Positions 12,191-57,157 of a DNA stretch of 64,000 nucleotides are shown here, piece after piece. Where the stretch lies: IMG/VR virus record IMGVR_UViG_3300030102_006934, positions 316,344 through 380,343 of that record. One strand, given 5' to 3'. Each line of letters begins with the position of its first letter. Within the stretch, counting starts at the first letter, position 1. A program made the translations under genes and the position numbers. The notes under the pieces were generated by a model, which saw only the letters and a program-made list of their open reading frames with translations, ran no database searches and was not told the DNA's origin.

Positions 12191-12388
12191 GTGAGTATCA
12201 AAAGAATCATAAAAGAAGAGGTGGATGAATTTGATTGGGTTAAAGATGTTAACCCAAGACTACCAATATCTAAAAAAGAAATATCTTTGATTAATGAAGT
12301 TATAAATTTCCTAATTGATAATGAACAGTATGGTGATGATTGGGGTGAACATATCGATACACTTCAAAAAATAATAGACCAAGGTTAA
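12191..12388 (+). CDS. xE-DFDW leader family protein
   Basis: GTG start after ATATTTAT (12179); MSIKRIIKEEVDEFDWV. Confidence 0.75.
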   Translation: MSIKRIIKEEVDEFDWVKDVNPRLPISKKEISLINEVINFLIDNEQYGDDWGEHIDTLQKIIDQG

Positions 12389-12390
12389 AA

Positions 12391-13839
12391 ATGAACATAA
12401 AAAGGGTTATACGAGAAGAGTTGAGTGACTTTGACTGGGTTGAAGAGATACCCAGTGTATTACCCAAAGATAGTGATTGGTGGATAATCAATGATGTTGA
12501 TCCCTATAGTTTAGAGGTAAGTGAAGAAATACAAGATTTTGTATTTAAACAAGGTTTTACTTGGATGTCGGGTCGGAAAAATTTCGTACCCAACAAGGTC
12601 GTAGCAATCTCACATCGAGGTGGAACATATGATCAACAATTAGGTAGATTTGGTTTTTACCGTCCATCTGACCATTCACCAAGTGACATAGAAAGATATG
12701 AAACAGGGAAAGATGACCTAGTTTATCGATGGAGTGAAATCGTTAAACCAATTAAAGAATCGGATGATATGGATTGGATTAGAGATATAAAACCAACAGA
12801 CCCAATCGGTGATTTCCTCATGAAAAAATTTCATGAGAAAATGGTTACTTATTTATCGTTGGGTGGTAGAAAAGGTGATGTTATTTCTAGGGAATGGGCT
12901 ACCGTTGAAGCTTTTTTAATTGAATTAAGGGAATTAAAAGAGAATGGCTTTGTTAATTTTTTAAGTAGGGTATTATTACAAAGTCATGTCGATAGACCTT
13001 ACCCACATGTCTTAAAGGCTATAGAAGACTCAGGTTTTGACGTTAATAAGTCAGAAGAAACCAAAAGACTTTATAAAATATTTCAGTCTTATAACTCTTT
13101 GGGTAATAGAATAAAAAGGACTTTAAAAAAAACTTTCATAAGAGAGAATGACCTAGATTGGATTGCTGGTGTTAGTAAAGACTATTGGGATTATTATGAT
13201 GCTGTGGTTTTCAAAAAAACATTGTTTGATGCTGAATTTAAGAAGTTTATTAACCAAGCCCTAAAATCCGTACAACCAACCAACGCTTCAGATTGGGAAG
13301 AAGATGATGAGATGAGTGATTTAGAGTACTTAAATTATAGGATTAGAAGACATGGCCAAGCTTTTATCGGAAAATACAGAGATGAAAAAGGTCGGAATGT
13401 TTTAGTTTTTGGTCAGGACCCAGATTATGAACTATACCCCCAAGTAAAGGATGCTAAAACTATAAATTACGAAGATATAAAAAAGGGGTTGTTCGAATCC
13501 AACGACTTTAGTTGGATCCAAGATATAGAACCACCGGTATTTAAACAACTAGATATTGCCACAAAAGATGATAATGATATAAACGTAAAGTGGGGTGATA
13601 ATGGGGATTTTAGTGAGGTGATAGATTCTAGTGGTCATAGGTATTTTAATCAAAGGGAATTAGGTTTATTTTTAGGTCTTTCTTATAGAAATTGGTCTGA
13701 AACTATTAATAATCTAGGGAAGTCAAATCTACTATTATATATAAAACACTTGATTGATTCTATAGAGTGGAGTTTACCAAGAGAACAGGAAGATTATGAT
13801 GATTTTATTAAATTATATAAAATAGTGGAAAAGTTATGA
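12391..13839 (+). CDS. Modular xE-DFDW polyprotein (4 modules)
   Basis: IREELSDFDWV, IKESDDMDWI, IRENDLDWI, LFESNDFSWI. Confidence 0.85.
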   Translation: MNIKRVIREELSDFDWVEEIPSVLPKDSDWWIINDVDPYSLEVSEEIQDFVFKQGFTWMSGRKNFVPNKVVAISHRGGTYDQQLGRFGFYRPSDHSPSDIERYETGKDDLVYRWSEIVKPIKESDDMDWIRDIKPTDPIGDFLMKKFHEKMVTYLSLGGRKGDVISREWATVEAFLIELRELKENGFVNFLSRVLLQSHVDRPYPHVLKAIEDSGFDVNKSEETKRLYKIFQSYNSLGNRIKRTLKKTFIRENDLDWIAGVSKDYWDYYDAVVFKKTLFDAEFKKFINQALKSVQPTNASDWEEDDEMSDLEYLNYRIRRHGQAFIGKYRDEKGRNVLVFGQDPDYELYPQVKDAKTINYEDIKKGLFESNDFSWIQDIEPPVFKQLDIATKDDNDINVKWGDNGDFSEVIDSSGHRYFNQRELGLFLGLSYRNWSETINNLGKSNLLLYIKHLIDSIEWSLPREQEDYDDFIKLYKIVEKL

Positions 13840-14366
13840 ACCTAAAAAAAATTATAAAAGAGGAATTAATTAAAGAATCTGGTGTAGAAAATTATCTACA
13901 ATCAATATCTAGTATAACTTCAGGTAATCAAAAAAAGTATTACCAATGGATTTTAGATAATCTAGAAAAAATTCCTGTTGTTAGTTATCGTTCTAACGAA
14001 GAACTAAAAGATAAAATAGATTCTTTTGTGGGAAAAATGAGACGCCGTGGTAGTTTTTGTGAAAAGAAAGGTTGTTTTGATACTGCCTATAATACAGCAA
14101 TGCATGTTCCTGGAGTTCATTATATAGAAGGTTATGTTCAATCCATGATACCTATTGTTCACGCATGGAATTATCTTCCAGAAGAAGGTATATATTTTGA
14201 TTTAATTAACGATATAGCTTGGGAAGAAGAAGATTCACACTTTAACGAATACTATAAGGTTATAGATTTAGATAAGTCAGGTGTGTTAAAATGGTCCATT
14301 GAAACTGGTTACGGTGGTGGATTCCTAGAAAGCCCAAAGTTTGTTAAACATATTTTAAAACAATAA
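13836..14366 (+). CDS. Leader-bearing protein, possible papain/transglutaminase-like fold
   Basis: MNLKKIIKEELIKE; KGCFDTA, YIEGYV, IVHAWN. Confidence 0.7.
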   Translation: MNLKKIIKEELIKESGVENYLQSISSITSGNQKKYYQWILDNLEKIPVVSYRSNEELKDKIDSFVGKMRRRGSFCEKKGCFDTAYNTAMHVPGVHYIEGYVQSMIPIVHAWNYLPEEGIYFDLINDIAWEEEDSHFNEYYKVIDLDKSGVLKWSIETGYGGGFLESPKFVKHILKQ

Positions 14367-14382: not shown

Positions 14383-15408
14383 ATGAACATCAAAAGAATT
14401 ATAAAAGAGGAGATGGATGACTTTGATTGGGTTAGAAATATAGAGGTTGATACTGATTTAACCCCTGCTCAACTTTACAATAGAATTAATGATTTACCAA
14501 ATGGTATAGTTGGCCCTTATGTCGGTGAAAACTTCGCTGATATTAAGTATGAGAATGGTAGGTACTATTTAATGGTTGATGATTTTTGTGATTTTAAAGA
14601 ATGGTTTAGTGATAGAGAAAACGGTTCTCAAGGTTATTATATGAATCAATGGGCTTTTACACAAGCTTTTTGTGGAGAAGATGATTTTTTTGAACCTTAT
14701 GGTGATTTGGTTTATGATTGGATTGACCAAGTATGGGAACTTGTTGCGGGGGATGAAAAATTATATAATTATGTAGTTGATTACATTACTGAAAACTTAG
14801 TTGGGGATGAGATGAGATTAGATAATGAGGAAAAAATATTAACTTTAGAAGATGTTCTTACTTGGTCAGCTGATTCAGATGTTTTAGGAATGGTTATAAA
14901 TGAACTAGATGTTTTTGAGGATTTAAAATGGGAATTAGAGAGATCTTACGAAAATGCTTATAATACATTTGTTGTTGATAATATGTATAAAGCAGGTAGG
15001 GATGCTATCACAGATGTTGTGGGTGATGGTGAAAGAAAAGATGTAGAACTTTATAATTCATACAGTAAATCCAATTACAACGCTAATAAATTAGTTTTTG
15101 ACGTGACGAGTATGTTGTCAGATTATCTTTATGAGGCTATTGAGTATTGTATAGATAATAGATGTAAACCTTATTGGAAACCAGAGAATTATGATTTTGA
15201 ATCGGAGGGTGAGACGGAAGAAGAAGCTTTTGAAGATTTTTGTCATGAGTGTATGAATTACCCCTTTGATGACCATGGGTCTTTCCTTTCTTTTATGAAA
15301 GAAATATTAGAAGAAAATGGGGACTTATTAAATCCTAGAGTCGATGATTACCCTAGTAACGATGAGATAGAAGATTATTTTATAGAAGACGTACATGGAA
15401 GATTCTAA
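14383..15408 (+). CDS. Acidic xE-DFDW family protein (paralog B1)
   Basis: ATATTTAT at 14371; MNIKRIIKEEMDDFDWV; similar to the C-terminal module of 15395-16759. Confidence 0.85.
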   Translation: MNIKRIIKEEMDDFDWVRNIEVDTDLTPAQLYNRINDLPNGIVGPYVGENFADIKYENGRYYLMVDDFCDFKEWFSDRENGSQGYYMNQWAFTQAFCGEDDFFEPYGDLVYDWIDQVWELVAGDEKLYNYVVDYITENLVGDEMRLDNEEKILTLEDVLTWSADSDVLGMVINELDVFEDLKWELERSYENAYNTFVVDNMYKAGRDAITDVVGDGERKDVELYNSYSKSNYNANKLVFDVTSMLSDYLYEAIEYCIDNRCKPYWKPENYDFESEGETEEEAFEDFCHECMNYPFDDHGSFLSFMKEILEENGDLLNPRVDDYPSNDEIEDYFIEDVHGRF

Positions 15409-16759
15409 AAAAACAAATTTAAAATTAATTATACGAGAAGAGTTGGATGACTTTGATTGGGTCAGAGACGTGAATACCAATCAAGATATCGCATTAGACA
15501 TTGTTAATAAAACTAAATTTTTTGTGTTAGACGGTAGTTTAAGGGTAGACCTACCTTTTATGAGTTATTATGAAGGTTATCCAGTGAAACAGTTATTTAA
15601 CTCCTCGTCATTACTTAAAAGTAATAGCCCTACTATTATGTTCCTTAATTACGTTAGCCAAAATCATGGGTTTGAAAGAACCGACTTCATGGCCAAATAT
15701 AACATAAACGCAAATGTACGTGATATATGGTTTAGGTATAAAAATTTAATGACACAAAAAGTTTTAGACAACCTTAAAGATAAACCAATTAACGAATCAG
15801 ATGACTTTGGTTGGGTTAGGGATATAAAGATTGATTATGATTTAACTCCTGCTCAGTTTTACCATAGGTATGAAGGTAATTTACCACTAAAATTTGTAGG
15901 ACCACTAATAGATAATGGATTTATTGATATAGACTATGATGGAGATGAACTTTATTTAAAATTGGAAGACGGTTGGTGTGATTTAAAATCACTTTTTACG
16001 GAACATGATACCAGTTCTTCTCAAGGAGCATACATTAACAAAAGTTTAGTTAATAATTTATATTGTGATGAGGATTACTTTGAACCATTCGATGGGATAG
16101 TTTATGATTGGGAAGATCAAGTTTGGGGCCTTATAACTCAAGATGATGAACTATATAAATACATAATAGACCATATAAACGAAAATATTGTGGGTTACCA
16201 AATGGATTTTGAGGGTGAACAAAGAACTCTAACTAAGGAAGATATTCTTGAATGGTCTGCCGACTCCGATGGGTTGGGTGAAGTCATCAATGACTTGAAT
16301 GTTTTTGAGGATTTAAAATGGGAATTAGAACTTTCTTATGAAAATGCTTATAACAATGTAATTAGAGATAATATTTACGAATCCGTTAGAAAAAGTGTTG
16401 AGGATTATCTTGGTCCGGCTGATTGGTATGGTAATGTTTTAACTTTTAAAGTAACTGAACCTCTTTTAGAACTTATAGGTAATGAAATTGGTGATTGTTG
16501 GGAAAACTGTAAACGACTTTGGGATCCAAAAGAATATGAAGATACTTATATGATGTTCAATAAAACCGAAGAAGAAGCTTTTGAGGAATACTGTGGTTCT
16601 TGTTTTGACCACCCATTTGATTCATATGGTTACTTTTTGGATTTCTTTAGTGAGTACTTATCTGAAGAAGGGGAATTACTAAACCCAAGGCTTGATGAAT
16701 TCGCGTCAGATGCTGAAATGTTACCATATTTTAAAGACGAGGTCTATTCTAGATTTTAA
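15395..16759 (+). CDS. Two-module xE-DFDW polyprotein (paralog B2)
   Basis: IIREELDDFDWV; INESDDFGWV. Confidence 0.85.
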   Translation: MEDSKKTNLKLIIREELDDFDWVRDVNTNQDIALDIVNKTKFFVLDGSLRVDLPFMSYYEGYPVKQLFNSSSLLKSNSPTIMFLNYVSQNHGFERTDFMAKYNINANVRDIWFRYKNLMTQKVLDNLKDKPINESDDFGWVRDIKIDYDLTPAQFYHRYEGNLPLKFVGPLIDNGFIDIDYDGDELYLKLEDGWCDLKSLFTEHDTSSSQGAYINKSLVNNLYCDEDYFEPFDGIVYDWEDQVWGLITQDDELYKYIIDHINENIVGYQMDFEGEQRTLTKEDILEWSADSDGLGEVINDLNVFEDLKWELELSYENAYNNVIRDNIYESVRKSVEDYLGPADWYGNVLTFKVTEPLLELIGNEIGDCWENCKRLWDPKEYEDTYMMFNKTEEEAFEEYCGSCFDHPFDSYGYFLDFFSEYLSEEGELLNPRLDEFASDAEMLPYFKDEVYSRF

Positions 16760-22334: not shown

Positions 22335-22829
22335 ATGAATATGAAAAAAAGAGTCGTAAAGTTTAATGAGTCGGATCTAGAAAAAATTGTTCAAAAAATA
22401 CTAAAGGAAGAGGGTGAAGAAAGAAGTTCACGTTATATGTTCTTTTCTAACTTAGAACAAATTCATAGACAAGCAGCCATGTTGTTAGAGATGGATGAAG
22501 ATATGTTGGAACAAATCTTAAATAACGGTCATGATTGGGCACAAGATCACATATCAGAAGCTAAAAATAACATGGACCAAGTATTTGATTTCATTATGAA
22601 TAAAATCAAAGAACCCCAAAACGTTTCTGTTGATGAGGGTAGTAATTTAAAAAATAATAACTTAATCTCAGAGAGTGGTAAAAACTGTGCAGACACAGAA
22701 AAGGGTTGTATTAGAAAAAGAAAGTCTGGTTGGGTTATTTTAAATAATAAAAAAGGTGGTGTTTGGAGAAAATGTGACTCCAAAAAACACTGTGAAGAAA
22801 TATTAGATGCGTTTCACGCTAGTAAGTAG
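22335..22829 (+). CDS. Leader-bearing protein with basic Cys-rich C-terminal module
   Basis: ATATTTAT at 22317; FNE-S, ILKEE, LISE-S sites. Confidence 0.8.
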   Translation: MNMKKRVVKFNESDLEKIVQKILKEEGEERSSRYMFFSNLEQIHRQAAMLLEMDEDMLEQILNNGHDWAQDHISEAKNNMDQVFDFIMNKIKEPQNVSVDEGSNLKNNNLISESGKNCADTEKGCIRKRKSGWVILNNKKGGVWRKCDSKKHCEEILDAFHASK

Positions 22830-22831
22830 TT

Positions 22832-23893
22832 ATGGAAATTAAAGAAATTATATTAGAAGAGTTATTTCTTGAGGCTAAGAAGAAAAAGAAATCTAAAAAA
22901 AAGAAGAAAGCTAAAAGAGATGCTTGTTACCATAAAGTTAAGTCTAGATATGATGTTTGGCCTTCAGCTTATGCTTCAGGAGCCTTAGTAAAATGTAGAA
23001 AAGTTGGTGCAGCTAATTGGGGTAACTCAAAGAAAGAATCTGAAGAAATAGAAAACCACAACTTAATCACTGAAAAAAAGAAAGGTAAAAGAAAGTTAAC
23101 TAAAAAGGCTAGTTCAGAATCAAACTTAGGTGATTGGTTCAAAAGAAAAGGAGCTAAAGGTTCTTCTGGTGGTTGGGTTGATTGTAATGCTCCTGACGGT
23201 AAAGGTGGTTATAAATCATGTGGTAGAAAAGAAGGTGAAAAAAGAGCTAAATACCCAGCTTGTAGACCTACACCTGGAGCATGTAAAGATAAGGGTAAAG
23301 GTAAGTCTTGGGGTAAGAAAGCTAAGAAAGAATCTATATCTGAAAGTTTACAATATCACATAGACCGTAATATACCTTTAGTGGAAAACATTTATAGATA
23401 TGGTTCAGAAGGATTCTTTAACCTTATTAATGAAACTAGAGAATTATATAAAAAAGGTGAGATAGATTTATGTTTAGCTGATAAAGAATTACTCCAAACC
23501 AATATAGGCGAGAAAGCTATGTTTGAAGGTAAAGAGGTTTGGTTAGACATCCCAATGGAAAACACAGAAGTATTATTTGAGGATGATAAGTTTAAAGGTA
23601 AAAAGTCTGGTTCCCCAACTAGAGATACTTCTGGTGGTAAAGCTTATAAAGTTTATGTTGCTGGTTGTTCAAAGAAAACAGATTCAAATCCAAGAGGAAT
23701 TAAATTAGTTAGATTTGGTTCTGGTGGTTTAAAAGCTAAGTTAAGTAACAAAGAAGCTAAAAAGTCTTACAACGCTAGACACGGTTGTTCAGAAGGAAGA
23801 CATAACGATAAGTGTAAGGCTGGTTATTGGTCTTGTAGATTACCACGTTACGCTAAAAAATTAGGTTTGTCTGGTGGTGGAACTTGGTGGTAA
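22832..23893 (+). CDS. Basic Lys/Gly/Cys-rich multi-module protein
   Basis: VWPSAYASGALVKC, WVDCN...YPACRP and KAGYWSC modules separated by LITE, ISE, LFE. Confidence 0.8.
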   Translation: MEIKEIILEELFLEAKKKKKSKKKKKAKRDACYHKVKSRYDVWPSAYASGALVKCRKVGAANWGNSKKESEEIENHNLITEKKKGKRKLTKKASSESNLGDWFKRKGAKGSSGGWVDCNAPDGKGGYKSCGRKEGEKRAKYPACRPTPGACKDKGKGKSWGKKAKKESISESLQYHIDRNIPLVENIYRYGSEGFFNLINETRELYKKGEIDLCLADKELLQTNIGEKAMFEGKEVWLDIPMENTEVLFEDDKFKGKKSGSPTRDTSGGKAYKVYVAGCSKKTDSNPRGIKLVRFGSGGLKAKLSNKEAKKSYNARHGCSEGRHNDKCKAGYWSCRLPRYAKKLGLSGGGTWW

Positions 23894-24293
23894 AATAGAG
23901 TGCCCAATATGTGATTGGGATTGGGAATTAGAATCTGATGATGATAGACCTACATTATGTCATAAATGTGGATATGATTCGGATATAAAAGAGTTTGATA
24001 TGAAAGCTTTAAAAAAATGGGAAAAAGAAAACCAACTACCATTTCAAGAACAAAAAGAAGAAAGATATATAGTTAGAACTTTTTCCGAATCGACAGAGGA
24101 TACGGAATTGGTTTGGCATAGAGATAAGGAAGATAGGATAGTTAAAAGTTTAGGTAACACTGATTGGTCGATTCAATTGGATAATGAACTTCCTAGACCT
24201 TTAACAGAAATGATTTACATCCCTAAGAATAGTTACCATAGAGTTATTAAGGGTACGGGTGATTTAAAAGTGAGAATTAACAAATTATCATGA
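23874..24293 (+). CDS. Zn-ribbon plus cupin-like protein
   Basis: CPIC...CHKC; ELVWHRD...YHRVIKG. Confidence 0.7.
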   Translation: MVELGGKIECPICDWDWELESDDDRPTLCHKCGYDSDIKEFDMKALKKWEKENQLPFQEQKEERYIVRTFSESTEDTELVWHRDKEDRIVKSLGNTDWSIQLDNELPRPLTEMIYIPKNSYHRVIKGTGDLKVRINKLS

Positions 24294-25129
24294 AAACAAT
24301 AAATGAGGAAATAAATAGGATTAAACAGATAATGGGACTTCTAAATGAAGAAGGAAAACAGTATGGTACAATACTGATATTTGGACCTCAAGGTGTTGGT
24401 AAATCCACAATCACAAAACCATTAAGTAAAAAACTTGGGATGGAAGTTATTGGTACTGATGATTTTATTAATCAAGGTGACTGGCAAAGTCAAGAAACGA
24501 AAAAGAAAGGCTGGGAAAAAAGAAAAGAAAATGAGTTTACAGGTATGGTCAGTTTTTTAAAAAACAATTTAGGTAAACCAGTTATTTTAGATGTAGGTGG
24601 TAGTCATGGTGTGTGGGAAAAAGACCATTTAATAGAAATTATGAAATTAATATCAGATTATCCTAATAGATTTTTATTGTTACCCTCAAAAGATATGGGA
24701 AAATCAAAAGAATTTTTAAGACGTAATATGTTAAACAGAGAAAAAGGGATGGAAGGTGCTATTAAATACTGGGAAGCGTTATTAAAACAAGACGACAATT
24801 TCTCTAAAAACTTTAATGGTGAAGATAAAGTGGACTGGGACAAAAGAATGGAACGTGTAAAAAGTGGTGATGAAAGTGAAGCCAAATTTTGGATTAATAA
24901 AATGCAAACGAGACTAGATTTAATTAAGTCAGGAAAAGTAACATGGGATGAATTTGATATTAACGATGATAAAACTTTAATCAAAAAATCAGACCCCACC
25001 TATTTTGAAGATTATACTCAGTATTTCATAGAAAACATGAAAAAGTCTGGGATTGGGAATCATGTGATTTATAATTTAGGTAAAGAACAAGAATCATTAG
25101 TTGATGAAATAATAAGCAAATTAAAATAA
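24290..25129 (+). CDS. P-loop kinase (shikimate/nucleotide kinase-like) with leader
   Basis: GPQGVGKST, VILDVGG; leader MKTINEEINRIKQIMGLLNEE. Confidence 0.75.
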   Translation: MKTINEEINRIKQIMGLLNEEGKQYGTILIFGPQGVGKSTITKPLSKKLGMEVIGTDDFINQGDWQSQETKKKGWEKRKENEFTGMVSFLKNNLGKPVILDVGGSHGVWEKDHLIEIMKLISDYPNRFLLLPSKDMGKSKEFLRRNMLNREKGMEGAIKYWEALLKQDDNFSKNFNGEDKVDWDKRMERVKSGDESEAKFWINKMQTRLDLIKSGKVTWDEFDINDDKTLIKKSDPTYFEDYTQYFIENMKKSGIGNHVIYNLGKEQESLVDEIISKLK

Positions 25130-27568: not shown

Positions 27569-27647
27569 TTGGAATGGTCTTCTTTCTATTCGTTTTTATT
27601 TTTTTGGTTACCTGTTCTATCATCGATGATAATATTAATAAGAAAAA

Positions 27648-29111: not shown

Positions 29112-29112
29112 A

Positions 29113-30444: not shown

Positions 30445-30446
30445 AA

Positions 30447-42890: not shown

Positions 42891-45800
42891 GTGATGTCAA
42901 TTAAAAAAATTTTAAAAGAGTATAATAATTTCGATTGGATTAATGATATAAATCCTATTTCCCCACATATAGAAAATATTGTGGGTAAAAAACTACGTCA
43001 TCGAGACAATAACTTAGCACATATACCCAACCACAACGATTTAAGTAAAATAAAAGACGGTGGTGTTCTTTTATTAAAACCCAAGATGGATTATTATTTT
43101 GTTGTGGACCGTATAGACCGTATAACAAATGAGGTTATTATTAAAATATTCCCTAAAAGAAAATCTCGCTACAAACAAGAAGAAGTAAGATATTCAATTA
43201 GTGATATGGAGAATTTAATTCGGTTGGGTATATGGGTTCTTGATGATAGTATAGAAGAATCTGATAATACCATAGTAGAAGAAGAGGAAATAGGGCTAGA
43301 CAATGATGAAAATATATCACAAGAAGAAATAGATTATATTAATAAAGAGTATGGTTCTTTAAGGGATAGGGAAAATATAAAAAACACATTGAAGAACCCA
43401 CCTTTTAACTTCAATCCGTCCCAAATAAGAAATGGAAGTATCAACACTTATGTTGTGAGATATATAGTTTCTAAAGAAGGAAATAAAGGTAATAAAGATG
43501 TTTTTGTAAAAGAAAAATTTGAAAATTTTTTGGATAAAGTAAATAGTGTATTGGGCACTAATTACAAAAACTCTAGTGGATATAGGGAATTGACATCATC
43601 AGCAAAACCCAAAAAACAAGGGGCTTTGACTCAACGACAAATATTGGTACACAACTTTAATATGAGTAAGGAAGCAATTGAAAGTTGGTTACAAGTAAAA
43701 CAAAATAACCAAAGAGTTGTTGGACAAAAGAACCTAAGACAGCCAAAAACACAGGAAGAGATAGATACTAACCTTACTAAACTCATAGATTATTTAGCTA
43801 AAACTAAACTTAGTGAAATTATTTTATCATTAGATGGTTTACTAGAAAAGTTTGGGTTAAGTCGTGATGATAAAAGTAAAAATGACGCAATCCCCAAAAA
43901 AGATGAGATTGTTAAACAATTAATTGATGAATTTGAACAGAACTTAAGGGTGAAGTTTTATTTAAATTACATTGGTGGTAATGTTGTAGATCAAAGGTCT
44001 AACTGGGCAACATTTGTGAGGTATTCTAAAGCAATTAAAAAAATTATAGAAAACAGTGAACTACCAAAAGACCTCGGAATAGACTTTAAAAATAGTAAGA
44101 ACTATAAAAGGTTAAAGGATTTATTTGAAAAAATAAAAGAAAAAGAATACTGTTACATTTTTAGTGAAAACTGTGAATTATCCAGTTCTGATATAGAAAA
44201 AGTTATGGACTTTTTCGGTAAAAAATATGAAAATAGTTTTTTAACTAAAGGATTTAAAAAAGATACTAATAGGGGTCTTGAGTCTAGGATTCATAATTTA
44301 GATATGGTGGGGTATAACTTTTCTGAAAAAATAAAATCAAAAGATTTTAATGCGGACGAAATTTATAATTATATAACTAAAAACATTAAAAATTATTTAG
44401 ATAATACAGAAACTATTGTTAAGTATGATTTATTGGCTAAAGGGGAAAGAAAAGACAATAAGGGTAATATTATAATACCCAACGAAGGTAAAGTTGAGGT
44501 AAAGGATATAAACTATTTAGATAGTTACTTATCAGAATTTTTAGCATCTCCAGTCAAAAGAGCGGAATATGGGGTGAAAGATGACCCTAAATATTTAAAA
44601 AGGTATAATGAAGTGGTTGATAGGGTTTATACCTATTTAACAGAAAATTATAAAGAAATCATTATTAGTAAAATTCAAGAAGGTTTAGAAGGTATAATAA
44701 TATCTAATAATATCTATGTCCCTAATAAAAAAAATAACATTAAATTTTATTTATCCGATATTGGTCGAAGTAACCCCAAAAAACAAAGAAGAATTACTGT
44801 TAGATACGAGATTAATGAAAGTAACTGGGAAAATTTTTATATAATAGATGATAATGGTGTGTTACAACCACTAGATGAAGACACCAAAAAAGTGTTAAGA
44901 TATAAAGGTGAAAAAATTTCTGAATCTAACGACATTGATTGGATAAAAGATGCTTATAAAACAGAATGGACTTTTGATGATATCGCACAATTATATTATG
45001 CTGGTGACGTTGAAGCTGTTAAAATTGTTAGGTTTAAAGATTTAAAACACTTAAGGGGAGCTATTGAGTGGTGTCTTGGTGAGGATGCGGAGTTAGATTT
45101 TTTCAATGAATTCAAGGTCGGTAATATACGCCAGATACTTTCTACCAATTTAGACATTGACGGCCAAATATCACACAATAATTTTACAGTGAGTGATTTA
45201 GATTGTGGTTGGTGTCTAGATGACCCAGATTCCATTGGTTATAATTGTAATGAAAGACCTAAAACCATGTCTCTACGGGTTGATGGTCAAATATTCGAAG
45301 ACTCTTTTGCCTTCAGTGAGGATTGGGTTGAGTTAGAACCTATTATGAAATCAGATGAAATAAATGAATCTTCTGAGGGGTTAGAATGGATTAGGGATGT
45401 GGTACCTGACGACAGTGTAAGATTTGATAAAGATAAATTATATTACTTTAACCCACCACTAAACCATGATGAGATAATAAATTTAATGAATAGAATACCC
45501 AATGAAAGTAAGTATACACAAACCAAAAAATGGTTTGATAGGGTTTTTGGGGGTAGAGCACCACAGAGGTATATGACTTATTTTAATGTAGATGGTGGTG
45601 ATCGAAATGATGGTAAATTTTATGTTAGTGGTTGGTGTAGTGAAACTCGTTGGTCTCAGGTTAATGATGAGTATTATCCACACTCTGAACCAGTAAATGG
45701 TAGGGATGAATTTTTTGGACACTATAAAATTTCAGAAGAAAAGGTAAGTGAATCTAAAGACGATTTTGATTGGGCGAGGGACGTTAATCCAAATCCTTTT

Positions 45801-47627
45801 CACGGTACAAACATTAAATTCTATATAAACGCTACACCAACTCAAGAACAAGCTGAAAAGATTTGGGATTTATTAATTGATGCGGGTGTAACTGATTCGG
45901 CTAAAGTTAAAGAATACAACAGGGTGTATAAGTTGATGAGGGGTAGAGGTACATTTATGATGATTGACCACGATGGTGACTTTATGTATAATATTGATAA
46001 CTTATCTGAGTACGTTAGAAATGGAAGAATTAGTTCTGGTAATATTATTAATTTTACAGACATTTTTTCAGATGATGAACCTGATGATTATATAAAAGAA
46101 TCTAAAGATTTTGAATGGTTAGATGATGTACCACTAACTCTTAACCATATTTTTAATGAGTTAAGTATTGGTGATGAGTTAACCCTAAAGGGCAATACTT
46201 ATGGTGCTCATCTAAATATGCAACATTTTAAATACACAGAACCTTTTACAATTACGATACAATCAATCGGACCTAGATTAGAAGATTCTGATTTTAAAAT
46301 ATCAGTTAGAGAAAAGGAAGCTATAGTTAACTTAGGTATAAAACATAAGGGTGAACTACTTAAAAAGTACCCAAAATTTCATGTGTTTTCAAATAATTCG
46401 TTTTTTCCAGAGGATGGCGATTTAGAAGTTGTTTCTTGGGTTAAATCTGAAGATAAATTAGAAGAGTCCTCACAAGATTGGGATTGGGCCGAAACTCCAG
46501 AAGTAATCATAGGGGGTAAAAACGGTTTACCAAAAGAAAGTGTTCCTTTAGGTACTAAAGTGGTGAATTATGATGGTGACATATTCACCATAGAGGATAT
46601 TACTGGAGGGTATATGGATTTCCAACATGTATGGGGTAGTGACCAAAAGACAGCTTGGTTGGGTCCTAAAGATGATGAGGATAATAAAAATTGGCATAAT
46701 ACCTTATGGTTAAGAAAAGCAACTTCTGAAGATTTAAATGAATCTGAAAATGAGTGGGACTGGGCAAAGAATATAGTTACTGATGGTTTAGATCTTAAGT
46801 TTAGTGAAGGGATGTGTTTACTTAGGAAAGACGGTACTCGATGGTTGGTAGTGGATACACCGAAACACGCTTCAAAATCCACAACATTAGTTTGGCTTCA
46901 ACGAACTCACACAAATGGGATAGATATAACTGAAAAAAAGAGGCCAATCTCACCCTTTAGAGAATCAACTCTTTCTAGGCAAATACAAAGTGGTGATATA
47001 ACAATCTGTAATAAACCTTTAAAGGAATCCGATGACTTTGATTGGGTTGATGATATTGATGCTGTAGACCCTAAAAAACCTAAGCCTGGTTATGTTTATA
47101 ATTGGAGTGGTTATAGTGATATAATTGATGATGATGAGGTGCTAACCGATACCATAATTATTACAAAAATAAAGGGTGATGACGAATGGGTTAGTGGGGG
47201 TTTTGAAATTATGTTTGTTCCAGAAGGTACTTCTCCCAATTCCGAAGATGCGGTTCATAAACAAGTTTTTGATAAATTAGTTGATAAGGGTGAAATTCAA
47301 TTTCTTCACAAATTAGATACTGATATGGTTAATGAATCTAAAGATGATTTTGATTGGGTTAGAGATACAATACCTGTTGAACTAGAAGACCCTCAATCTT
47401 GGGTCGGTAGGTCCTTTGGTTATGGTCCTGAAATAGTAGATAACATGGATGGAGCGGAACTAGCAATGGGTGATGATAAGGAATATTATACTATAGATAG
47501 TATTGATGGAAATGGTAATTTAGCTTTAACGAGGCACCACCCCAATAGAAGAAGCATGAGTGATAGTAGTACTTCAGTTATTTCTTTAAGAGATTATATT
47601 AGTAATGGTAGATGGGTATGGGTTTAA
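42891..47627 (+). CDS. 1578-aa modular xE-DFDW polyprotein
   Basis: ATATTTAT at 42878; leader plus 8 internal xE-S..[DE]W linkers. Confidence 0.9.
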   Translation: MMSIKKILKEYNNFDWINDINPISPHIENIVGKKLRHRDNNLAHIPNHNDLSKIKDGGVLLLKPKMDYYFVVDRIDRITNEVIIKIFPKRKSRYKQEEVRYSISDMENLIRLGIWVLDDSIEESDNTIVEEEEIGLDNDENISQEEIDYINKEYGSLRDRENIKNTLKNPPFNFNPSQIRNGSINTYVVRYIVSKEGNKGNKDVFVKEKFENFLDKVNSVLGTNYKNSSGYRELTSSAKPKKQGALTQRQILVHNFNMSKEAIESWLQVKQNNQRVVGQKNLRQPKTQEEIDTNLTKLIDYLAKTKLSEIILSLDGLLEKFGLSRDDKSKNDAIPKKDEIVKQLIDEFEQNLRVKFYLNYIGGNVVDQRSNWATFVRYSKAIKKIIENSELPKDLGIDFKNSKNYKRLKDLFEKIKEKEYCYIFSENCELSSSDIEKVMDFFGKKYENSFLTKGFKKDTNRGLESRIHNLDMVGYNFSEKIKSKDFNADEIYNYITKNIKNYLDNTETIVKYDLLAKGERKDNKGNIIIPNEGKVEVKDINYLDSYLSEFLASPVKRAEYGVKDDPKYLKRYNEVVDRVYTYLTENYKEIIISKIQEGLEGIIISNNIYVPNKKNNIKFYLSDIGRSNPKKQRRITVRYEINESNWENFYIIDDNGVLQPLDEDTKKVLRYKGEKISESNDIDWIKDAYKTEWTFDDIAQLYYAGDVEAVKIVRFKDLKHLRGAIEWCLGEDAELDFFNEFKVGNIRQILSTNLDIDGQISHNNFTVSDLDCGWCLDDPDSIGYNCNERPKTMSLRVDGQIFEDSFAFSEDWVELEPIMKSDEINESSEGLEWIRDVVPDDSVRFDKDKLYYFNPPLNHDEIINLMNRIPNESKYTQTKKWFDRVFGGRAPQRYMTYFNVDGGDRNDGKFYVSGWCSETRWSQVNDEYYPHSEPVNGRDEFFGHYKISEEKVSESKDDFDWARDVNPNPFHGTNIKFYINATPTQEQAEKIWDLLIDAGVTDSAKVKEYNRVYKLMRGRGTFMMIDHDGDFMYNIDNLSEYVRNGRISSGNIINFTDIFSDDEPDDYIKESKDFEWLDDVPLTLNHIFNELSIGDELTLKGNTYGAHLNMQHFKYTEPFTITIQSIGPRLEDSDFKISVREKEAIVNLGIKHKGELLKKYPKFHVFSNNSFFPEDGDLEVVSWVKSEDKLEESSQDWDWAETPEVIIGGKNGLPKESVPLGTKVVNYDGDIFTIEDITGGYMDFQHVWGSDQKTAWLGPKDDEDNKNWHNTLWLRKATSEDLNESENEWDWAKNIVTDGLDLKFSEGMCLLRKDGTRWLVVDTPKHASKSTTLVWLQRTHTNGIDITEKKRPISPFRESTLSRQIQSGDITICNKPLKESDDFDWVDDIDAVDPKKPKPGYVYNWSGYSDIIDDDEVLTDTIIITKIKGDDEWVSGGFEIMFVPEGTSPNSEDAVHKQVFDKLVDKGEIQFLHKLDTDMVNESKDDFDWVRDTIPVELEDPQSWVGRSFGYGPEIVDNMDGAELAMGDDKEYYTIDSIDGNGNLALTRHHPNRRSMSDSSTSVISLRDYISNGRWVWV

Positions 47628-47844: not shown

Positions 47845-48888
47845 ATGGATTCAGAAAAAAAAGAAGGTAAAGTTTCAAACGATTTTGATTGGGTAAAAGA
47901 TGTTAAAGCAAGACTACCTTTAAGAGTTGGTACTTGTTTAACTTTTAAACACTCAAAAGAGGAAGAAGAATGGGTAGAAGATGAATACGGTAACATGATT
48001 GACCACGGTAAAATGAACTGGCATATCACAAGTAAGTTTATAGATGTGTATAATGACGATAAACCAACCTTTTCAATGGTAGCCACAGATAGAATGGGTG
48101 AAAGTCGTCAAATTTTTATGGAAGTGGAAAAGGTTAAAGAATTGTATGAGGAAGGTGTTTATGAGCCTTGTAAAAAACAGCCATACCTAAAAAGAGTAAT
48201 GAAAGAAGAATCCGATGATTTTGATTGGGTTGAGGATGTTTCCAACACTTTACCCAGAAATGATAATTGGATGTTAATTAACGATGTAGACCCTGATTCT
48301 TTGGAAGTGTCTAAAGATATACAAAATTACCTATTCAGTAAGGGTTTGTTTTGGAATACAGGTAGAAAAACCCCATTGTATCAACGTATATTAGCGATAC
48401 ACTATGTCTTACCACACCGAATACATAGTGGTAGCTTTACCTACGTACCTAATAGTATACCTCATGAAAAAGCAAGATTAGAAGTTGAGTATGATAGGGA
48501 AGAACTTCTCAAAAAAGGAAAACATGTTTACTATTGGAGTCAATTAAAACCAGAAAAAGATAATATCAAAGAATCAAAAGATTTAAAATGGATCGAAGAT
48601 ATTGATTTTACAGACCCTAAAAAACCCAAACGTGGTTATGTTTATGATTGGAAGGGTTATAGTGATAGTGTTGCTAATTTAGGATATCAGTTAGGTGAAA
48701 TTGGGGATATTATAATTATTAAAGAACCATTTAGCAACCCAAGTCATAGGTACCCCAAGTGGAAGATGCATTACTTCGATACTTTAAATTTTGATTGGGG
48801 TGAAGAATTAGATGGTATTTCTGAAATTGAATTCAATAGAAAAATAGATGACGGTACCATAACCTACCTATACAAGTTAGGTCAATAA
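47845..48888 (+). CDS. Three-module xE-DFDW polyprotein
   Basis: NDFDWV, MKEESDDFDWV, IKESKDLKWI. Confidence 0.85.
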   Translation: MDSEKKEGKVSNDFDWVKDVKARLPLRVGTCLTFKHSKEEEEWVEDEYGNMIDHGKMNWHITSKFIDVYNDDKPTFSMVATDRMGESRQIFMEVEKVKELYEEGVYEPCKKQPYLKRVMKEESDDFDWVEDVSNTLPRNDNWMLINDVDPDSLEVSKDIQNYLFSKGLFWNTGRKTPLYQRILAIHYVLPHRIHSGSFTYVPNSIPHEKARLEVEYDREELLKKGKHVYYWSQLKPEKDNIKESKDLKWIEDIDFTDPKKPKRGYVYDWKGYSDSVANLGYQLGEIGDIIIIKEPFSNPSHRYPKWKMHYFDTLNFDWGEELDGISEIEFNRKIDDGTITYLYKLGQ

Positions 48889-52082: not shown

Positions 52083-52715
52083 ATGAGTATTAAAAAAATT
52101 ATAAGGGAAGAGTTAGAGTCAATGGTTTATTCGGATAAGATTAAGCCCAAACACAAAAAAAAGATGAGTCGTGAACTTAAGTTTTTTAAAGACTTCCCTA
52201 TTCGAAAATTTGCTAATATACCACCACCTAAAAACGAATCCATAGAAACTGAAGAAGAAATAGATTATTTAGAGAGTATACCAGTTAGTAAAAAATTTGT
52301 GGACGTGGCAGATGAATTCGAAGATTACTTTGGTGAATTTCTTAAAATTAGAGGATTAAAATACCCAAAGAAAGAATTATCAGAATTAATAGAAGAGACT
52401 AAAACAATAATTCTAAAATTAAAATACCACTATAACAGACCAAGACCATACCAAATAGCTAATGAAAAAAATATGTCTTTGAATTCTGAAGATTTAGCAT
52501 CAGCTAAAACACCCTCTTACCCATCTGGACACGCAACACAAGGTACTTTTATTAGTCGTTATTTAGCCGATTTATACCCAAAATACGAGAAAGAACTTTT
52601 AGACATGGGTGAGGATATCGCTTTTAGTAGAAATATGGCAAAAGTACATTACCCAAGTGACACTGAGTTAGGTAAAATACTTGGTAATGATTTGTATGAT
52701 TATCTAGGAAAATAG
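52083..52715 (+). CDS. PAP2/haloperoxidase-superfamily phosphatase with leader
   Basis: KYHYNRPRP, PSYPSGH, SRNMAKVHYPSD; leader MSIKKIIREELE; ATATTTAT at 52068. Confidence 0.85.
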   Translation: MSIKKIIREELESMVYSDKIKPKHKKKMSRELKFFKDFPIRKFANIPPPKNESIETEEEIDYLESIPVSKKFVDVADEFEDYFGEFLKIRGLKYPKKELSELIEETKTIILKLKYHYNRPRPYQIANEKNMSLNSEDLASAKTPSYPSGHATQGTFISRYLADLYPKYEKELLDMGEDIAFSRNMAKVHYPSDTELGKILGNDLYDYLGK

Positions 52716-54183: not shown

Positions 54184-54564
54184 ATGAAGAAAATAATAAA
54201 AAGAATTTTAAGAGAAGAATTCAATGATTTTGATTGGATTAAGGACACTGGTGGTGATAAATATGTCCCTATAAGAGTTATTCTCAATAAGCTTGATGAG
54301 ACTTATTATGGGGAAAATCCTAATGAAATTCTAGAATACGAAAATGTTTTCAAAGTACCATTAGAAGATTTTGTGAGAATTACAAATAGTACGAATTATA
54401 CAGACGAGGAATATGAGATTATTACCCCAATAGGTCATAATTTACTTAATTATGCTTATGATTGTGAACTTAATCCATTTGTTTGTAAAGAAATTGATGA
54501 TTTTTTCGATACGGAGGTTGACGAATATATTGAGGGTATAGTATTATTGGATGATAATTTTTAA
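54184..54564 (+). CDS. xE-DFDW family protein
   Basis: ATATTTAT at 54172; ILREEFNDFDWI. Confidence 0.8.
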   Translation: MKKIIKRILREEFNDFDWIKDTGGDKYVPIRVILNKLDETYYGENPNEILEYENVFKVPLEDFVRITNSTNYTDEEYEIITPIGHNLLNYAYDCELNPFVCKEIDDFFDTEVDEYIEGIVLLDDNF

Positions 54565-54571
54565 TTTATAA

Positions 54572-57157
54572 ATGAGAGTTTTAATAAATAAAATATTAAA
54601 AGAGTTACATAGTAAAAGTATTATTAAAAAAGTACTTAATGAAAATTACCAGGACGAAAATATATCACAAGAAGAAAAAAATAGTATCATTGATGAGTAT
54701 GGGTGGTTAAAAAATGAAGAAAAAATTGAAAGTATTTTAAAAAACCCGCCTTTTTCAAAGAAAACTAGGACCTATAGAATAGTTAATAGCTATAGGGTTA
54801 GGTATATTATATCTAAGGAAATAAAAAAAAATGTATATTTTAATAACGCGGGTTGGGCTAACTTTGTAAAGAAGGTGGGTCAAGTAATAGGCTTAAAAAT
54901 AAAAGCAACAGATGATACCGTTTCAAAATTCTTTAAAAATATCGATGAGACCAAAAAATATGGTTTAGAGGGGAAACATTTAGAAGATAGAAAAAATACT
55001 TCCACGGAGTTAAAAAAGAATTGGAATAAAATAGACCCTGAAGTATACGAAGAAAGAATAGAACATACTATTAATTATTTAAAAAATACCAATATTACAG
55101 AATTGGAAAATTCAAAGACAAGCTTATTGACACGGTTTTCTTTAATACTAAGATACCAAGAAGAAATAATGAACTATCTTATTGATTATTTTAAAGATGA
55201 CCCAAAAATAAGGTTTTATCTTAGTTATCTTAATAAAGGTGGAAAATATTGGGGTACACTTGTAAAATACCAAAAAAAACTAAGTAATGTGCTAGACAAC
55301 CCTAATATTAGTGAAAAATATGATGACATTGTAGAAATGAAAAAATCATATAAGGCTATTATTGAAGAAGAAGCACCTTATTTGTTTAACGAAAAGGGTA
55401 ATTTTACTAAAAAAGAAAAGGAAATATTAGTAAATTGGTTTAATTTAACAAGTTATGAACATTCTTTCACAGAATTAGGGTTTTATAAACCAGAAGGAAA
55501 AGGTGCGGAGTCTTTAATACATAATCTACACAGTGCAGGTATTAGATACAATGTTAGTAATGAAATAAAAAATAATACTGATACTGATGACGTTGTAAAA
55601 TTTGTGATAAACAATATTATTAATTATTTAAAAAACACAAAAGATATAATTAAATACGATATTGTTAGTAAAGATACTATAAAAGATATTAATGGAAATG
55701 AAGTGATTCCAAAGGGTAGTAAAATAGAGGTTAAAGACATTAAGAATAGTGATAGTTATTTTGCTGAATTTTTATCATCACCTGTTAAAAGCGGTTCAGA
55801 AATATTGAATAATGAAGTTTATAGAGGAAGGTATAATAAAATAATAGAAGGAATTTATAATTGGTTATCTAACGATAGTGTGGGTATGGGTATTAAAAAT
55901 ACTATTAAGTGGTTAATGACTAACGATTTAGAAGGTATAATAATATCTAATAATATCTATGTCCCTAATAAAGATGGTAACATTGAATTTTATTTATCTA
56001 ATATTGGTCAAAACAACCCAAAAAATCATATAAGAATTACAATAAGATATAATATTAATTTAGATAAATCGAAAAATTTCTATAAAATAGGAGATGGTAA
56101 GTGGAAATTAAACGGTAAAGCATCCAAAAAAGGTATTCTTTACCCACTACCAGAAACAGAAAGTAATTTAATAAGACCCATAGAGAAACAAATTTATAAA
56201 ACAATAGAAGAATCTAAGACTAAATCTACAATAAATAAAATATTAAAAGAAGAATTCGATGATTTCGATTGGATTAAGGACACTTTTACCGAACTAAACA
56301 AAAGTGAAAAATGGATGTTGGTTAATGATATAGACCGTGAGAGTATATCGGAAGGTCATGAAATACAAAAATATCTATTTGACTTGGGTTATAGTTGGGG
56401 TACTGGTGATTTAAAAAATTCACTAAAAGATTTTTGTATCTATACAATATATCATTTCGGAAATATTAGAAATGATGAACACTTATATTACGGAGATGGT
56501 TGTAGAAGTGCTGATATAAGAATTTCAGATAAAGATATTAAAAGTGGTGAACATATAGTTTATTATTGGAGTGAGTTAAAACCTAAAACAATAAAGGAAG
56601 AAAACGATTTTAAATGGATTGATGAACCAAGAAACAACCCATTAGATGGTTTAAGATTAACAACACCTATGGGTAGAGCTGGTAGTGGTGGTAGTGGTTT
56701 AACAATAAAAGACGATGGTGGTACATATGTTACTGTTACCTCTTCTAACGGTTCTAGTGAATATCATAGGGGTACTGTTAAAAACTTTATAAGAATGGGT
56801 ATTTGGTTACCAATAGATTCTATGAATGAATCAGATGATTTTGATTGGGCGAAAGAAATAAAACCAACGTTGAATGTTGCCTTTGAAGAAGGTCTGATTA
56901 AAGCGGGTGATATTTTGACACTTTCTGGGGAACTAATGGATGATGAAGGAAGACACACAATACAAGTTTCAGATTTTAAAATAAAAATAGATCAAATATA
57001 TGGGCCTAATAGTGTATATAGAGACATCACCAGTTCTCTTTTCATACCACTACAAGAAAAATATTTCAAACACTTAGGTTATTATGAAAATGAATTTAAT
57101 GATTCTATCAGATTTGCTAAGAAAGATGGTGAGTTAGAAATATTAGATATATCTTAA
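54572..57157 (+). CDS. 861-aa modular xE-DFDW polyprotein
   Basis: Large module homologous to module 2 of 42891; ILKEEFDDFDWI, IKEENDFKWI, MNESDDFDWA. Confidence 0.9.
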   Translation: MRVLINKILKELHSKSIIKKVLNENYQDENISQEEKNSIIDEYGWLKNEEKIESILKNPPFSKKTRTYRIVNSYRVRYIISKEIKKNVYFNNAGWANFVKKVGQVIGLKIKATDDTVSKFFKNIDETKKYGLEGKHLEDRKNTSTELKKNWNKIDPEVYEERIEHTINYLKNTNITELENSKTSLLTRFSLILRYQEEIMNYLIDYFKDDPKIRFYLSYLNKGGKYWGTLVKYQKKLSNVLDNPNISEKYDDIVEMKKSYKAIIEEEAPYLFNEKGNFTKKEKEILVNWFNLTSYEHSFTELGFYKPEGKGAESLIHNLHSAGIRYNVSNEIKNNTDTDDVVKFVINNIINYLKNTKDIIKYDIVSKDTIKDINGNEVIPKGSKIEVKDIKNSDSYFAEFLSSPVKSGSEILNNEVYRGRYNKIIEGIYNWLSNDSVGMGIKNTIKWLMTNDLEGIIISNNIYVPNKDGNIEFYLSNIGQNNPKNHIRITIRYNINLDKSKNFYKIGDGKWKLNGKASKKGILYPLPETESNLIRPIEKQIYKTIEESKTKSTINKILKEEFDDFDWIKDTFTELNKSEKWMLVNDIDRESISEGHEIQKYLFDLGYSWGTGDLKNSLKDFCIYTIYHFGNIRNDEHLYYGDGCRSADIRISDKDIKSGEHIVYYWSELKPKTIKEENDFKWIDEPRNNPLDGLRLTTPMGRAGSGGSGLTIKDDGGTYVTVTSSNGSSEYHRGTVKNFIRMGIWLPIDSMNESDDFDWAKEIKPTLNVAFEEGLIKAGDILTLSGELMDDEGRHTIQVSDFKIKIDQIYGPNSVYRDITSSLFIPLQEKYFKHLGYYENEFNDSIRFAKKDGELEILDIS

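What the first reader, a model, noticed from the sequence alone, without database searches (positions are those of the whole stretch)
12191..57157. Candidate head-packaged, protease-processed polyprotein system defined by a repeated [ILVM]-x-E / (S)xDFDW linker
Seen: about 25 otherwise unrelated ORFs begin with a basic amphipathic leader ending in [ILV]xE(E) (MKNLIKKILKE, MSIKRIIKEE, MKHLIRKILNE). About 30 sites read [ILVM]xE(E)-(S)x(x)D[FLWM][DE]W[IVA], either just after the leader or internally (12391, 15395, 25880, 42891, 47845, 52774, 54572). Many of these genes or their operons carry an upstream ATATTTAT. Established: T4 prohead protease gp21 cleaves after Glu in [IL]-x-E, and T4 internal proteins are packaged via an N-terminal capsid-targeting sequence (MKTYQEFIAE) removed at such a site; phiKZ-type head proteases also cut after x-x-E. 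Inference: the leader is a capsid-targeting signal, the internal xE sites are cleavage points, and each released module starts with a new acidic-aromatic S-x-D-F-D-W N-terminus that could act as a docking or ejection tag. I know no description of this DFDW tag or of linker-built virion polyproteins of this kind.
Basis: partly seen in the sequence, partly recalled or inferred. Interest (0 to 1): 0.9.

Follow-up and report, generated by a model that had tools for sequence, protein, structure and literature searches.

The report
Linker-joined modular proteins of a jumbo phage
An uncultured marine jumbo phage strings unrelated ~100-residue protein modules together with one conserved 15-residue acidic-aromatic linker and a short N-terminal leader; this looks like phage T4's system for loading proteins into the head, but neither packaging nor cleavage is shown.

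Summary
A linker profile finds 28 sites in 12 plus-strand genes between 12191 and 57157.

Across 170 related proteins the consensus is [IL]-N-E-S-D-D-[FL]-D-W-[IV]-[KR]-D-[IV]-x-P, repeated about every 110 residues. The N-terminal copy follows a basic leader of roughly 10 residues. At least 377 protein clusters carry the linker. All come from metagenomes; none of 50,697 deposited phages has it.

- The modules between linkers are unrelated families (best profile-profile probability 29%).
- In the one module family modelled, the core folds confidently and both linkers are low-confidence coil.
- Near-identical strains differ by exactly one module, with the junction inside DFDW.
- These genes use an ATATTTAT promoter also found before the gp25 baseplate operon and an endolysin-like gene. 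None uses the host-type TAnnTTTG box.
- The genome also has a T4-type gp32.

This fits the T4 capsid-targeting and prohead-protease model. Against it:
- No head gene or protease turned up in about 150 kb examined.
- The proteins are acidic.
- Most of the conservation lies after the proposed cut.

I give it a confidence of about 0.4.

The parts
12191..12388 (+). 65-aa gene: leader, then linker (W codon at 12236), then a short module
   Evidence: ATATTTAT 4 nt before the start
12391..13839 (+). 482-aa gene with 4 linkers (W codons at 12436, 12775, 13159, 13513) and 4 modules
13836..14366 (+). 176-aa gene with the leader only, no DFDW
14383..15408 (+). 341-aa gene: leader plus linker (W at 14428). 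Its two modules are paralogous to those of the 15395 gene.
15395..16759 (+). 454-aa gene with 2 linkers (W at 15458, 15812)
22335..31473 (+). Tightly packed run of genes with ATATTTAT before its first gene, taken here to be one operon. Leader-only genes: 25129-25554, 25551-25883 and 25880-27568 (Pfam GP88 plus L5 gp82 domains). Leader-plus-linker genes: 29113-29877, 29878-30444 and 30447-30782. Weak leader: 22832-23893.
36575..37804 (+). 409-aa gene with a weak leader, behind ATATTTAT
42891..47627 (+). 1578-aa gene (JGI starts it at 42894). It has the leader and 9 linkers (W at 42936, 44940, 45387, 45771, 46116, 46485, 46761, 47043, 47355). About 530 residues of its N-terminal part (residues 139-670) are 35% identical to residues 28-535 of the 54572 protein.
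47845..48888 (+). 347-aa gene with 3 linkers (W at 47890, 48226, 48589) and no basic leader. The middle module was modelled.
52083..52715 (+). 210-aa gene: leader fused to a PAP2-type phosphatase domain with no predicted membrane helix
52774..54060 (+). 428-aa gene with a leader and one internal linker of the full-leader type (W at 53656)
54184..54564 (+). 126-aa gene: leader, linker (W at 54235), one module
54572..57157 (+). 861-aa gene: leader, a 557-residue N-terminal part, then 3 linkers (W at 56270, 56615, 56846)
48202..48246 (+). Example of the 15-residue linker core (8 residues before W to 6 after). The other 27 sites have the same layout around the W codons listed above.
12179..12186 (+). 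ATATTTAT promoter-like box. Others sit at 14371, 22317, 36562, 42878, 52068, 52762 and 54172, and it also precedes genes outside the family.

Best explanation
These are probably late-expressed cargo proteins of a T4-related jumbo phage that infects Bacteroidota.

Proposed mechanism:
1. The roughly 10-residue basic amphipathic leader acts like a T4 capsid-targeting sequence and brings the protein, or a whole string of modules, into the prohead.
2. A Glu-specific prohead protease of the gp21 type cuts after the conserved [IL]-x-E of the leader and of each exposed linker.
3. This releases many small, mostly acidic, unrelated modules. Each would start with S/E-(x)-D-D-F-D-W-[IV]-[KR]-D.
4. The modules would be delivered to the next host with the DNA.
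5. Because the linker is shared, modules can be added, lost or exchanged in frame.

Shown here: the motif and how common it is; that the modules are unrelated; the predicted lack of structure in the linkers; a one-module insertion/deletion exactly at the linker; a promoter motif shared with baseplate and endolysin-like genes; and T4-type gp25 and gp32 in the genome.

Inferred only: late timing, packaging, cleavage, and any role for the DFDW end.
For: - The motif is enriched about 30-fold over shuffles and occurs only on the coding strand.
- The linker is a 15-residue motif with [IL] 58%, E 75% and S 64% at the proposed P3, P1 and P1'. Nothing is conserved further upstream.
- The leader reaches its first [ILVM]-x-E at residues 9-11. 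The T4 capsid-targeting sequence is 10-19 residues, with processing determinants at residues 8 and 10 (PMC9026906).
- T4 internal proteins are a diverse set that shares only the targeting sequence (PMC3012670).
- The motif sits before each module: the first W is at residue 15-19 in 105 of 170 proteins, and the median distance from the last W to the C-terminus is 104 residues.
- The modules are unrelated (hhalign maximum 29%).
- In the model the module core has pLDDT 85-95, while both linkers are below 50 and coil.
- P0003 equals P0001 minus one module, with the junction inside DFDW.
- ATATTTAT precedes every operon of this family. It also precedes the gp25 baseplate operon, a tail-fibre-like ORF and an amidase endolysin-like gene. 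The host-type TAnnTTTG box precedes other genes and never a family gene.
- T4-type gp25 and gp32 are present.
- Similar aquatic Bacteroidota jumbo phages carry a 'prohead core protein protease' (PMC12619734).
- In a relative, two linker modules are fused to a membrane helix and a lysozyme domain, an architecture known from ejection proteins (PMC5694885).
Against: - No prohead protease, capsid, portal or scaffold gene was found in the window or in about 85 kb walked upstream.
- The neighbouring genes are accessory or metabolic: thymidine kinase, LOG, PAP2, 4HBT, NUDIX and HNH.
- ATATTTAT also precedes the thymidine kinase, HNH, GH16 and PrsW genes, so 'late' is not established.
- Most of the motif's information lies after the proposed cut. 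That is not typical of gp21-type sites, which have few determinants (PMC9026906).
- The proteins are acidic (median pI 4.9, against 6.7 for the rest). T4 internal proteins are described as basic (PMC9026906).
- Gene 47845 has linkers but no leader.
- [ILVM]-x-E is common by chance in this K/E/I-rich proteome.
- Low pLDDT at the ends of a modelled construct is weak evidence for disorder.
Confidence: 0.4

Rival explanations
1. The proteins are not cleaved. They are multi-domain 'beads on a string', and the linker is a short acidic-aromatic docking motif. Several copies per protein would bind one common partner, either a phage hub or a host protein. The leader would be a second interaction helix.
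For: - Conservation extends 6 residues past the W. The pattern F..W I..I with flanking acids and a closing Pro suits a short amphipathic binding helix.
- The linkers are predicted to lack structure.
- Having many copies per protein, up to 13, is typical of multivalent binding motifs.
- The genomic context is accessory.
Against: - It does not explain the conserved [IL]-x-E-S just before the acidic block.
- It does not explain why the same motif follows a 10-residue leader at the very N-terminus of 105 of 170 proteins.
- No candidate partner has been identified.
Confidence: 0.3
2. These are true polyproteins, cut at the linker by a dedicated sequence-specific protease in the infected cell rather than in the head. 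This would yield many small accessory proteins in equal amounts from one open reading frame.
For: - A long, two-sided recognition sequence is typical of specific processing proteases.
- The modules resemble small stand-alone phage proteins of unknown function (weak Foldseek hits).
- Two protease genes lie near family genes: a PrsW-family gene follows the 12191-16759 cluster and an M43 gene lies between family genes.
Against: - PrsW is an intramembrane enzyme, and the M43 peptidase carries a signal peptide and a T9SS secretion tail, so neither suits soluble cytoplasmic substrates.
- The phage packs separate genes tightly elsewhere, so it does not need polyproteins for co-expression.
- It does not explain the N-terminal leader.
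Confidence: 0.12
3. The linker is kept mainly as a DNA-level recombination site that allows in-frame exchange of module cassettes. The peptide itself would have no function.
For: There is an exact one-module insertion/deletion at the linker, and modules are shuffled between genes and between genomes.
Against: - Mean nucleotide identity over 36 nt around the W is only 58%.
- Synonymous codons vary freely (GAT/GAC, four different Ser codons).
- Conservation therefore acts on the protein. The recombination is real but looks like a by-product.
Confidence: 0.05
4. All the modules are diverged copies of one repeat domain, and DFDW is simply its best-conserved first element.
For: The spacing is regular at about 110 residues.
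Against: - No profile-profile relationship exists among the 14 largest module families (maximum probability 29%).
- The linker lies outside the confident fold.
- Modules include lysozyme, NUDIX and GP88-type domains.
Confidence: 0.03

Closest known systems
Phage T4 capsid-targeting sequence and internal proteins (IPI, IPII, IPIII, Alt), processed by the prohead protease gp21
   Same: - A short N-terminal propeptide of about 10 residues ending in [IL]-x-E.
- Otherwise unrelated, fast-evolving proteins that share only that leader.
- A T4-related genome background (gp25, gp32).
   Different: - Here the motif also recurs inside proteins and joins up to 9 modules in this window, and up to 13 in relatives.
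- A strongly conserved acidic-aromatic block follows the proposed cut.
- The proteins are acidic, not basic.
- Packaging, cleavage and the protease gene are all unverified.
Ejection and inner-body proteins of giant phages (phiKZ, 201phi2-1, SPN3US), processed by gp175/gp245
   Same: - Many head proteins, some in paralogous families.
- Cleavage after Glu, at several sites per protein.
- Propeptides thought to target proteins to the prohead (PMC5694885).
   Different: - Those propeptides are mostly longer than 100 residues.
- Their motif is A/S/G-x-E.
- They have no shared downstream tag and no strings of unrelated modules.
Polyvalent proteins of phages and conjugative elements (Iyer et al. 2017, PMC5512222)
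   Same: They are large proteins of 2-15 unrelated domains, predicted to be packaged and injected and sometimes processed by proteolysis.
   Different: - Polyvalent proteins are built from recognisable conflict domains (MuF, metallopeptidase, ART, ParB and others) and often sit next to portal or head genes.
- Almost no known domains are found here.
- The junctions here are one conserved linker, a feature that paper does not describe.
Encapsulation peptides of bacterial microcompartments and encapsulin cargo-loading peptides
   Same: A short terminal peptide on otherwise unrelated cargo proteins; in microcompartments it is an amphipathic helix (from general knowledge, not tested here).
   Different: Those systems use one tag per protein and no internal repeats or cleavage. 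No shell genes are present here.

Membership tests
T4-type capsid-targeted internal proteins | N-terminal propeptide of 10-19 residues ending in a [LI]-x-E processing site | tested here: met
   About 16 genes start with a basic leader, and all but one (25880) reach a first [ILVM]-x-E at residues 9-11. Compared with PMC9026906. This is a match in sequence pattern only.
T4-type capsid-targeted internal proteins | The genome encodes a gp21-family (Pfam PF03420) or related Glu-specific prohead protease | tested here: inconclusive
   None was seen in the 64-kb window or in about 85 kb walked upstream. About 230 kb of the contig was not read. A search with T4 gp21 returned only close T4 relatives.
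T4-type capsid-targeted internal proteins | The proteins are present in virions and are cut at the site | not testable with these tools
   The phage is uncultured. No deposited phage carries the family.
T4-type capsid-targeted internal proteins | Expressed when heads are assembled (late) | tested here: inconclusive
   The ATATTTAT box is shared with the gp25 baseplate operon, a tail-fibre-like ORF and an amidase endolysin-like gene. It is absent before the replication genes checked. It also precedes the thymidine kinase, HNH and GH16 genes. There are no expression data.
T4-type capsid-targeted internal proteins | Small basic DNA-associated proteins | tested here: not met
   Median pI is 4.9 and 11 of 12 proteins are acidic.
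Polyvalent proteins (PMC5512222) | Many unrelated domains in one polypeptide | tested here: met
   Up to 9 modules per protein here and up to 13 linker stretches in relatives. The module families are unrelated to each other.
Polyvalent proteins (PMC5512222) | Hallmark conflict domains (MuF, metallopeptidase, ART, ParB, methylase and others) | tested here: not met
   Pfam on 10 window proteins and on 92 relatives found only GP88, L5 gp82, lysozyme, NUDIX, PSP and Lsr2, each in a single protein.
phiKZ/SPN3US-type processed head proteins | Propeptides mostly longer than 100 residues (a few are short) and an A/S/G-x-E cleavage motif | tested here: not met
   The leader is about 10 residues and the P3 position is I/L (58%), not a small residue (PMC5694885).

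The most novel reading that the evidence does not exclude
A combinatorial cargo system in which one capsid-targeting leader pulls a whole string of unrelated effector modules into the head. A Glu-specific protease then cuts the string. The conserved S-D-D-F-D-W-I-K-D end left on every released module would be a functional tag, for example for docking on a core or portal component or for ordered ejection into the host. The shared linker would also let the phage population swap effectors in frame. An even less conventional reading, also not excluded, is that leader plus DFDW is an address for an intracellular phage compartment rather than for the capsid.
Probability: 0.2. Interest if true: 0.85.

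Novelty: new variant of a known kind. Interest (0 to 1): 0.62.

Why it matters
If the model is right, it would extend the T4 capsid-targeting principle in two ways. The unit would be a linker-defined polyprotein rather than a single protein, and the phages would be an abundant, uncultured group of marine Bacteroidota jumbo phages.

It would explain how such phages carry and quickly reshuffle a large set of small injected proteins, which are probably host-takeover or anti-defence factors.

It would also give a simple sequence rule, leader plus linker, for predicting virion cargo directly from metagenomes.

Even if the proteins are not cleaved, the finding stands as an undescribed family. It has at least 377 clusters, and one 15-residue peptide precedes more than a hundred unrelated domain families. 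The peptide is a well-defined handle for finding its binding partner or protease.

Tried and rejected
- **Near-identity and protein searches of deposited phages.** Three family proteins and two other window proteins were used. There were no family hits. The only hits were weak ones to two unannotated huge uncultured phages, LR756502 and LR745206.
- **Pfam, PHROGs, PDB sequence search and ESM Atlas on family proteins.** Nothing informative came back.
- **AlphaFold on the whole 347-aa protein** with a mixed alignment failed (pLDDT 38.7). A combined two-module alignment (A4) was mis-aligned by the shared linker and was not used.
- **Foldseek of the good module model.** There was no PDB match and only weak matches to small uncharacterised phage proteins.
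- **Degenerate DNA pattern scan of IMG/VR.** It found this same contig and one unrelated high-GC contig (L006), which is a chance match.
- **Search for the head protease.** I walked about 85 kb upstream through overlapping contigs of near-identical strains. This reached replication genes, the baseplate and tail-fibre block and a T4-type gp32, but no head genes. A database search with T4 gp21 listed only close T4 relatives.
- **Repeat-domain idea:** rejected.
- **DNA-level recombination signal idea:** rejected.
- **Sec or T9SS secretion signal:** rejected, because the leader has no hydrophobic core and the family proteins have no predicted membrane segments.

Full report
**Where the window comes from**

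The window is the last 64 kb of a 380,343-bp marine metagenomic contig, JGI 3300030102 Ga0183675_1000008, also listed as IMGVR_UViG_3300030102_006934. Near-identical copies occur in several Tara Oceans assemblies. GC content is about 30% and there are 8 tRNA genes.

A peptidase with a T9SS secretion tail and lipoprotein-type signal peptides point to a Bacteroidota host. The contigs that overlap the upstream side carry a T4-type gp25 baseplate gene followed by a block of large ORFs. They also carry a T4-type gp32, SbcCD, primase, a DnaB helicase, a ribonucleotide reductase and a sigma-70-family factor.

This resembles the recently described aquatic Bacteroidota 'moraphages', which share gp25, gp6, portal, a 'prohead core protein protease' and a sigma factor (PMC12619734). 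I did not test whether this phage belongs to that group. No deposited phage is close. The only hits were weak ones to two huge uncultured phages.

- Shuffled proteins give 0.87 +/- 0.95 hits.
- A linker HMM finds 28 sites in 12 genes.
- In 170 family proteins with 638 sites, the internal consensus is [IL]-N-E-S-D-D-[FL]-D-W-[IV]-[KR]-D-[IV]-x-P. Nothing is conserved before position -8.
- The N-terminal form reads M-N-[LI]-K-K-I-I-[KR]-E-E-x-D-D-F-D-W.
- Sites are spaced about 110 residues apart. The first W is at residue 15-19 in 105 of 170 proteins. The last W lies a median of 104 residues from the C-terminus, so the motif precedes each module.
- About 16 window genes have a clear leader, and several of them lack DFDW.

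**How widespread the family is**

A profile of the linker alone found 377 cluster representatives at E <= 0.001 among 1.84 billion proteins, with up to 13 linker stretches in one protein. All come from metagenomes. tblastn with three family proteins found nothing in 50,697 deposited phages. A literature search for DFDW together with phage found no paper.

**What lies between the linkers**

- 651 modules fall into 146 similarity clusters.
- The 14 largest families show no profile-profile relationship; the best probability is 29%.
- Known domains are rare: GP88 plus L5 gp82 in one window protein, and lysozyme, NUDIX, PSP and Lsr2 once each among 92 relatives.
- A model of one family with 30 sequences gave a confident alpha/beta core (pLDDT 85-95). 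Both flanking linkers were below 50 and had no secondary structure. These linkers sit at the ends of the modelled construct, so this is weak evidence.
- The core has no PDB counterpart and only weak similarity to small uncharacterised phage proteins.
- The family proteins are soluble and mostly acidic, with median pI 4.9 against 6.7 for the other proteins.

**Module exchange**

Modules recur in different genes of the window and in different combinations in relatives. P0003 is 89% identical to the product of 47845-48888 but lacks exactly one module, and the junction lies inside DFDW.

Nucleotide identity around the W averages only 58%, and synonymous codons vary. Selection therefore acts on the peptide, not on a DNA site.

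**Regulation**

ATATTTAT[TA]A sits 4-27 nt before the start codon in the following places:
- every operon of the family;
- the gp25 baseplate operon, where it follows a terminator;
- a tail-fibre-like ORF and an amidase endolysin-like gene;
- the PrsW, HNH, GH16 and thymidine kinase genes.

A host-type Bacteroidetes -7 box, TAnnTTTG, precedes a different set of genes, many of them on the minus strand, and never a family gene. The replication genes I checked lack ATATTTAT.

I infer that there are two temporal classes and that the family belongs with the baseplate and lysis genes. This is an inference from the motifs only.

**Context**

The family is concentrated between 12 and 57 kb of the window. 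In the roughly 85 kb walked upstream I found only two more members: a 784-aa linker protein and an 89-aa leader-only protein. The scan covered both strands for the first ~37 kb and the forward strand or called ORFs beyond that.

The neighbouring genes are accessory or metabolic. No head gene or protease was found in about 150 kb.

**Interpretation**

The closest known mechanism is T4's. There, a 10-19-residue capsid-targeting sequence with processing determinants at residues 8 and 10 brings diverse internal proteins into the prohead. gp21 then cuts after Glu (PMC9026906, PMC3012670, PMC5694885).

The following fit that model:
- the length of the leader and its [IL]-x-E ending;
- the conserved [IL]-x-E-S at each exposed junction;
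- the variety of modules;
- the probable late promoter;
- the T4-related genome background.

The following do not fit:
- most conservation lies after the proposed cut;
- the proteins are acidic;
- gene 47845 has linkers but no leader;
- the protease has not been found.

I therefore rate the head-packaged, protease-processed reading at about 0.4. The main rival is an uncleaved multivalent docking motif, at about 0.3. The other rivals are processing by a different protease (0.12), a pure recombination role (0.05) and a diverged repeat domain (0.03).

Packaged multi-domain phage proteins as a concept are already known as polyvalent proteins (PMC5512222). This family lacks their hallmark domains, and its single shared linker is not described there.

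Noticed in passing
window 12179, 14371, 22317, 42878, 52068, 52762, 54172, 60207 and others; L017:5160: There are two distinct promoter-like classes. ATATTTAT[TA]A lies 4-27 nt before start codons of baseplate, endolysin-like, linker-family and some accessory genes. A host-type Bacteroidetes TAnnTTTG box lies before a different set of genes, many on the minus strand. The very short spacing of the first class implies near-leaderless mRNAs.
   Followed up: partly
L012:10878-11693 (about 28 kb upstream of the window): The phage encodes a sigma-70-family factor of 271 aa with regions 1.2, 2 and 4. It is a candidate reader of the ATATTTAT class.
   Followed up: no
window 16807-17553 (+): A PrsW-family intramembrane metalloprotease gene (Pfam E 4e-19) with its own ATATTTAT box sits directly after the first linker-gene cluster. 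No link to the family has been shown.
   Followed up: no
window 50616-51842 (+): An M43 peptidase with a signal peptide and a T9SS Por_Secre_tail. A phage protein apparently exported through the host's type IX secretion system.
   Followed up: no
L018:1-5758 (about 80 kb upstream of the window): The C-terminal part of a 4098-aa protein carrying three cell-wall lytic domains (Amidase_2, Phage_lysozyme2, Peptidase_M15_4). It has no DFDW linkers in the 1919 residues read.
   Followed up: partly
L008:3271-4866 (-), a relative's contig: A 531-aa protein made of the leader, two linker modules, a predicted membrane helix and a T4-type lysozyme domain. It is either a membrane-anchored lysin or an ejection-type protein.
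   Followed up: partly
window 1642-5273 and 34610-34682: Eight tRNA genes (Glu, Asp, Ser, Met, Leu, Arg, Ala, Gly) lie next to a CCA-adding-enzyme-like gene at 4049-4789.
   Followed up: no
window 49600-63600, upstream of many small ORFs: A recurring AAACCAAAACAA(A/G) sequence lies just before the start codons of small genes, for example 58692, 61892, 62370 and 62711. It may be a translation-initiation or third promoter element.
   Followed up: no
window 27648-29111 (+), 8759-10189 (-) and 52774-54060 (+): The first two share an N-terminus (N-L-x-x-I-L-x-S-T-x-L-L-E-G-R). 27648 also shares an internal region with 52774, and both of those match phrog_17056. The leader-like start of 8759-10189 sits on a minus-strand gene that has an ATATTTAT box.
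   Followed up: partly
L016:3183-5918: A 911-aa ORF in the baseplate and tail-fibre block begins with repeated C-T-D-P-x-A-x-N-Y-N motifs. This block has no database matches at all.
   Followed up: no
L010:13115-14933: Two adjacent Mom-family genes (a DNA-modification family) and a DUF2828/TROVE-like gene lie behind host-type promoters.
   Followed up: no
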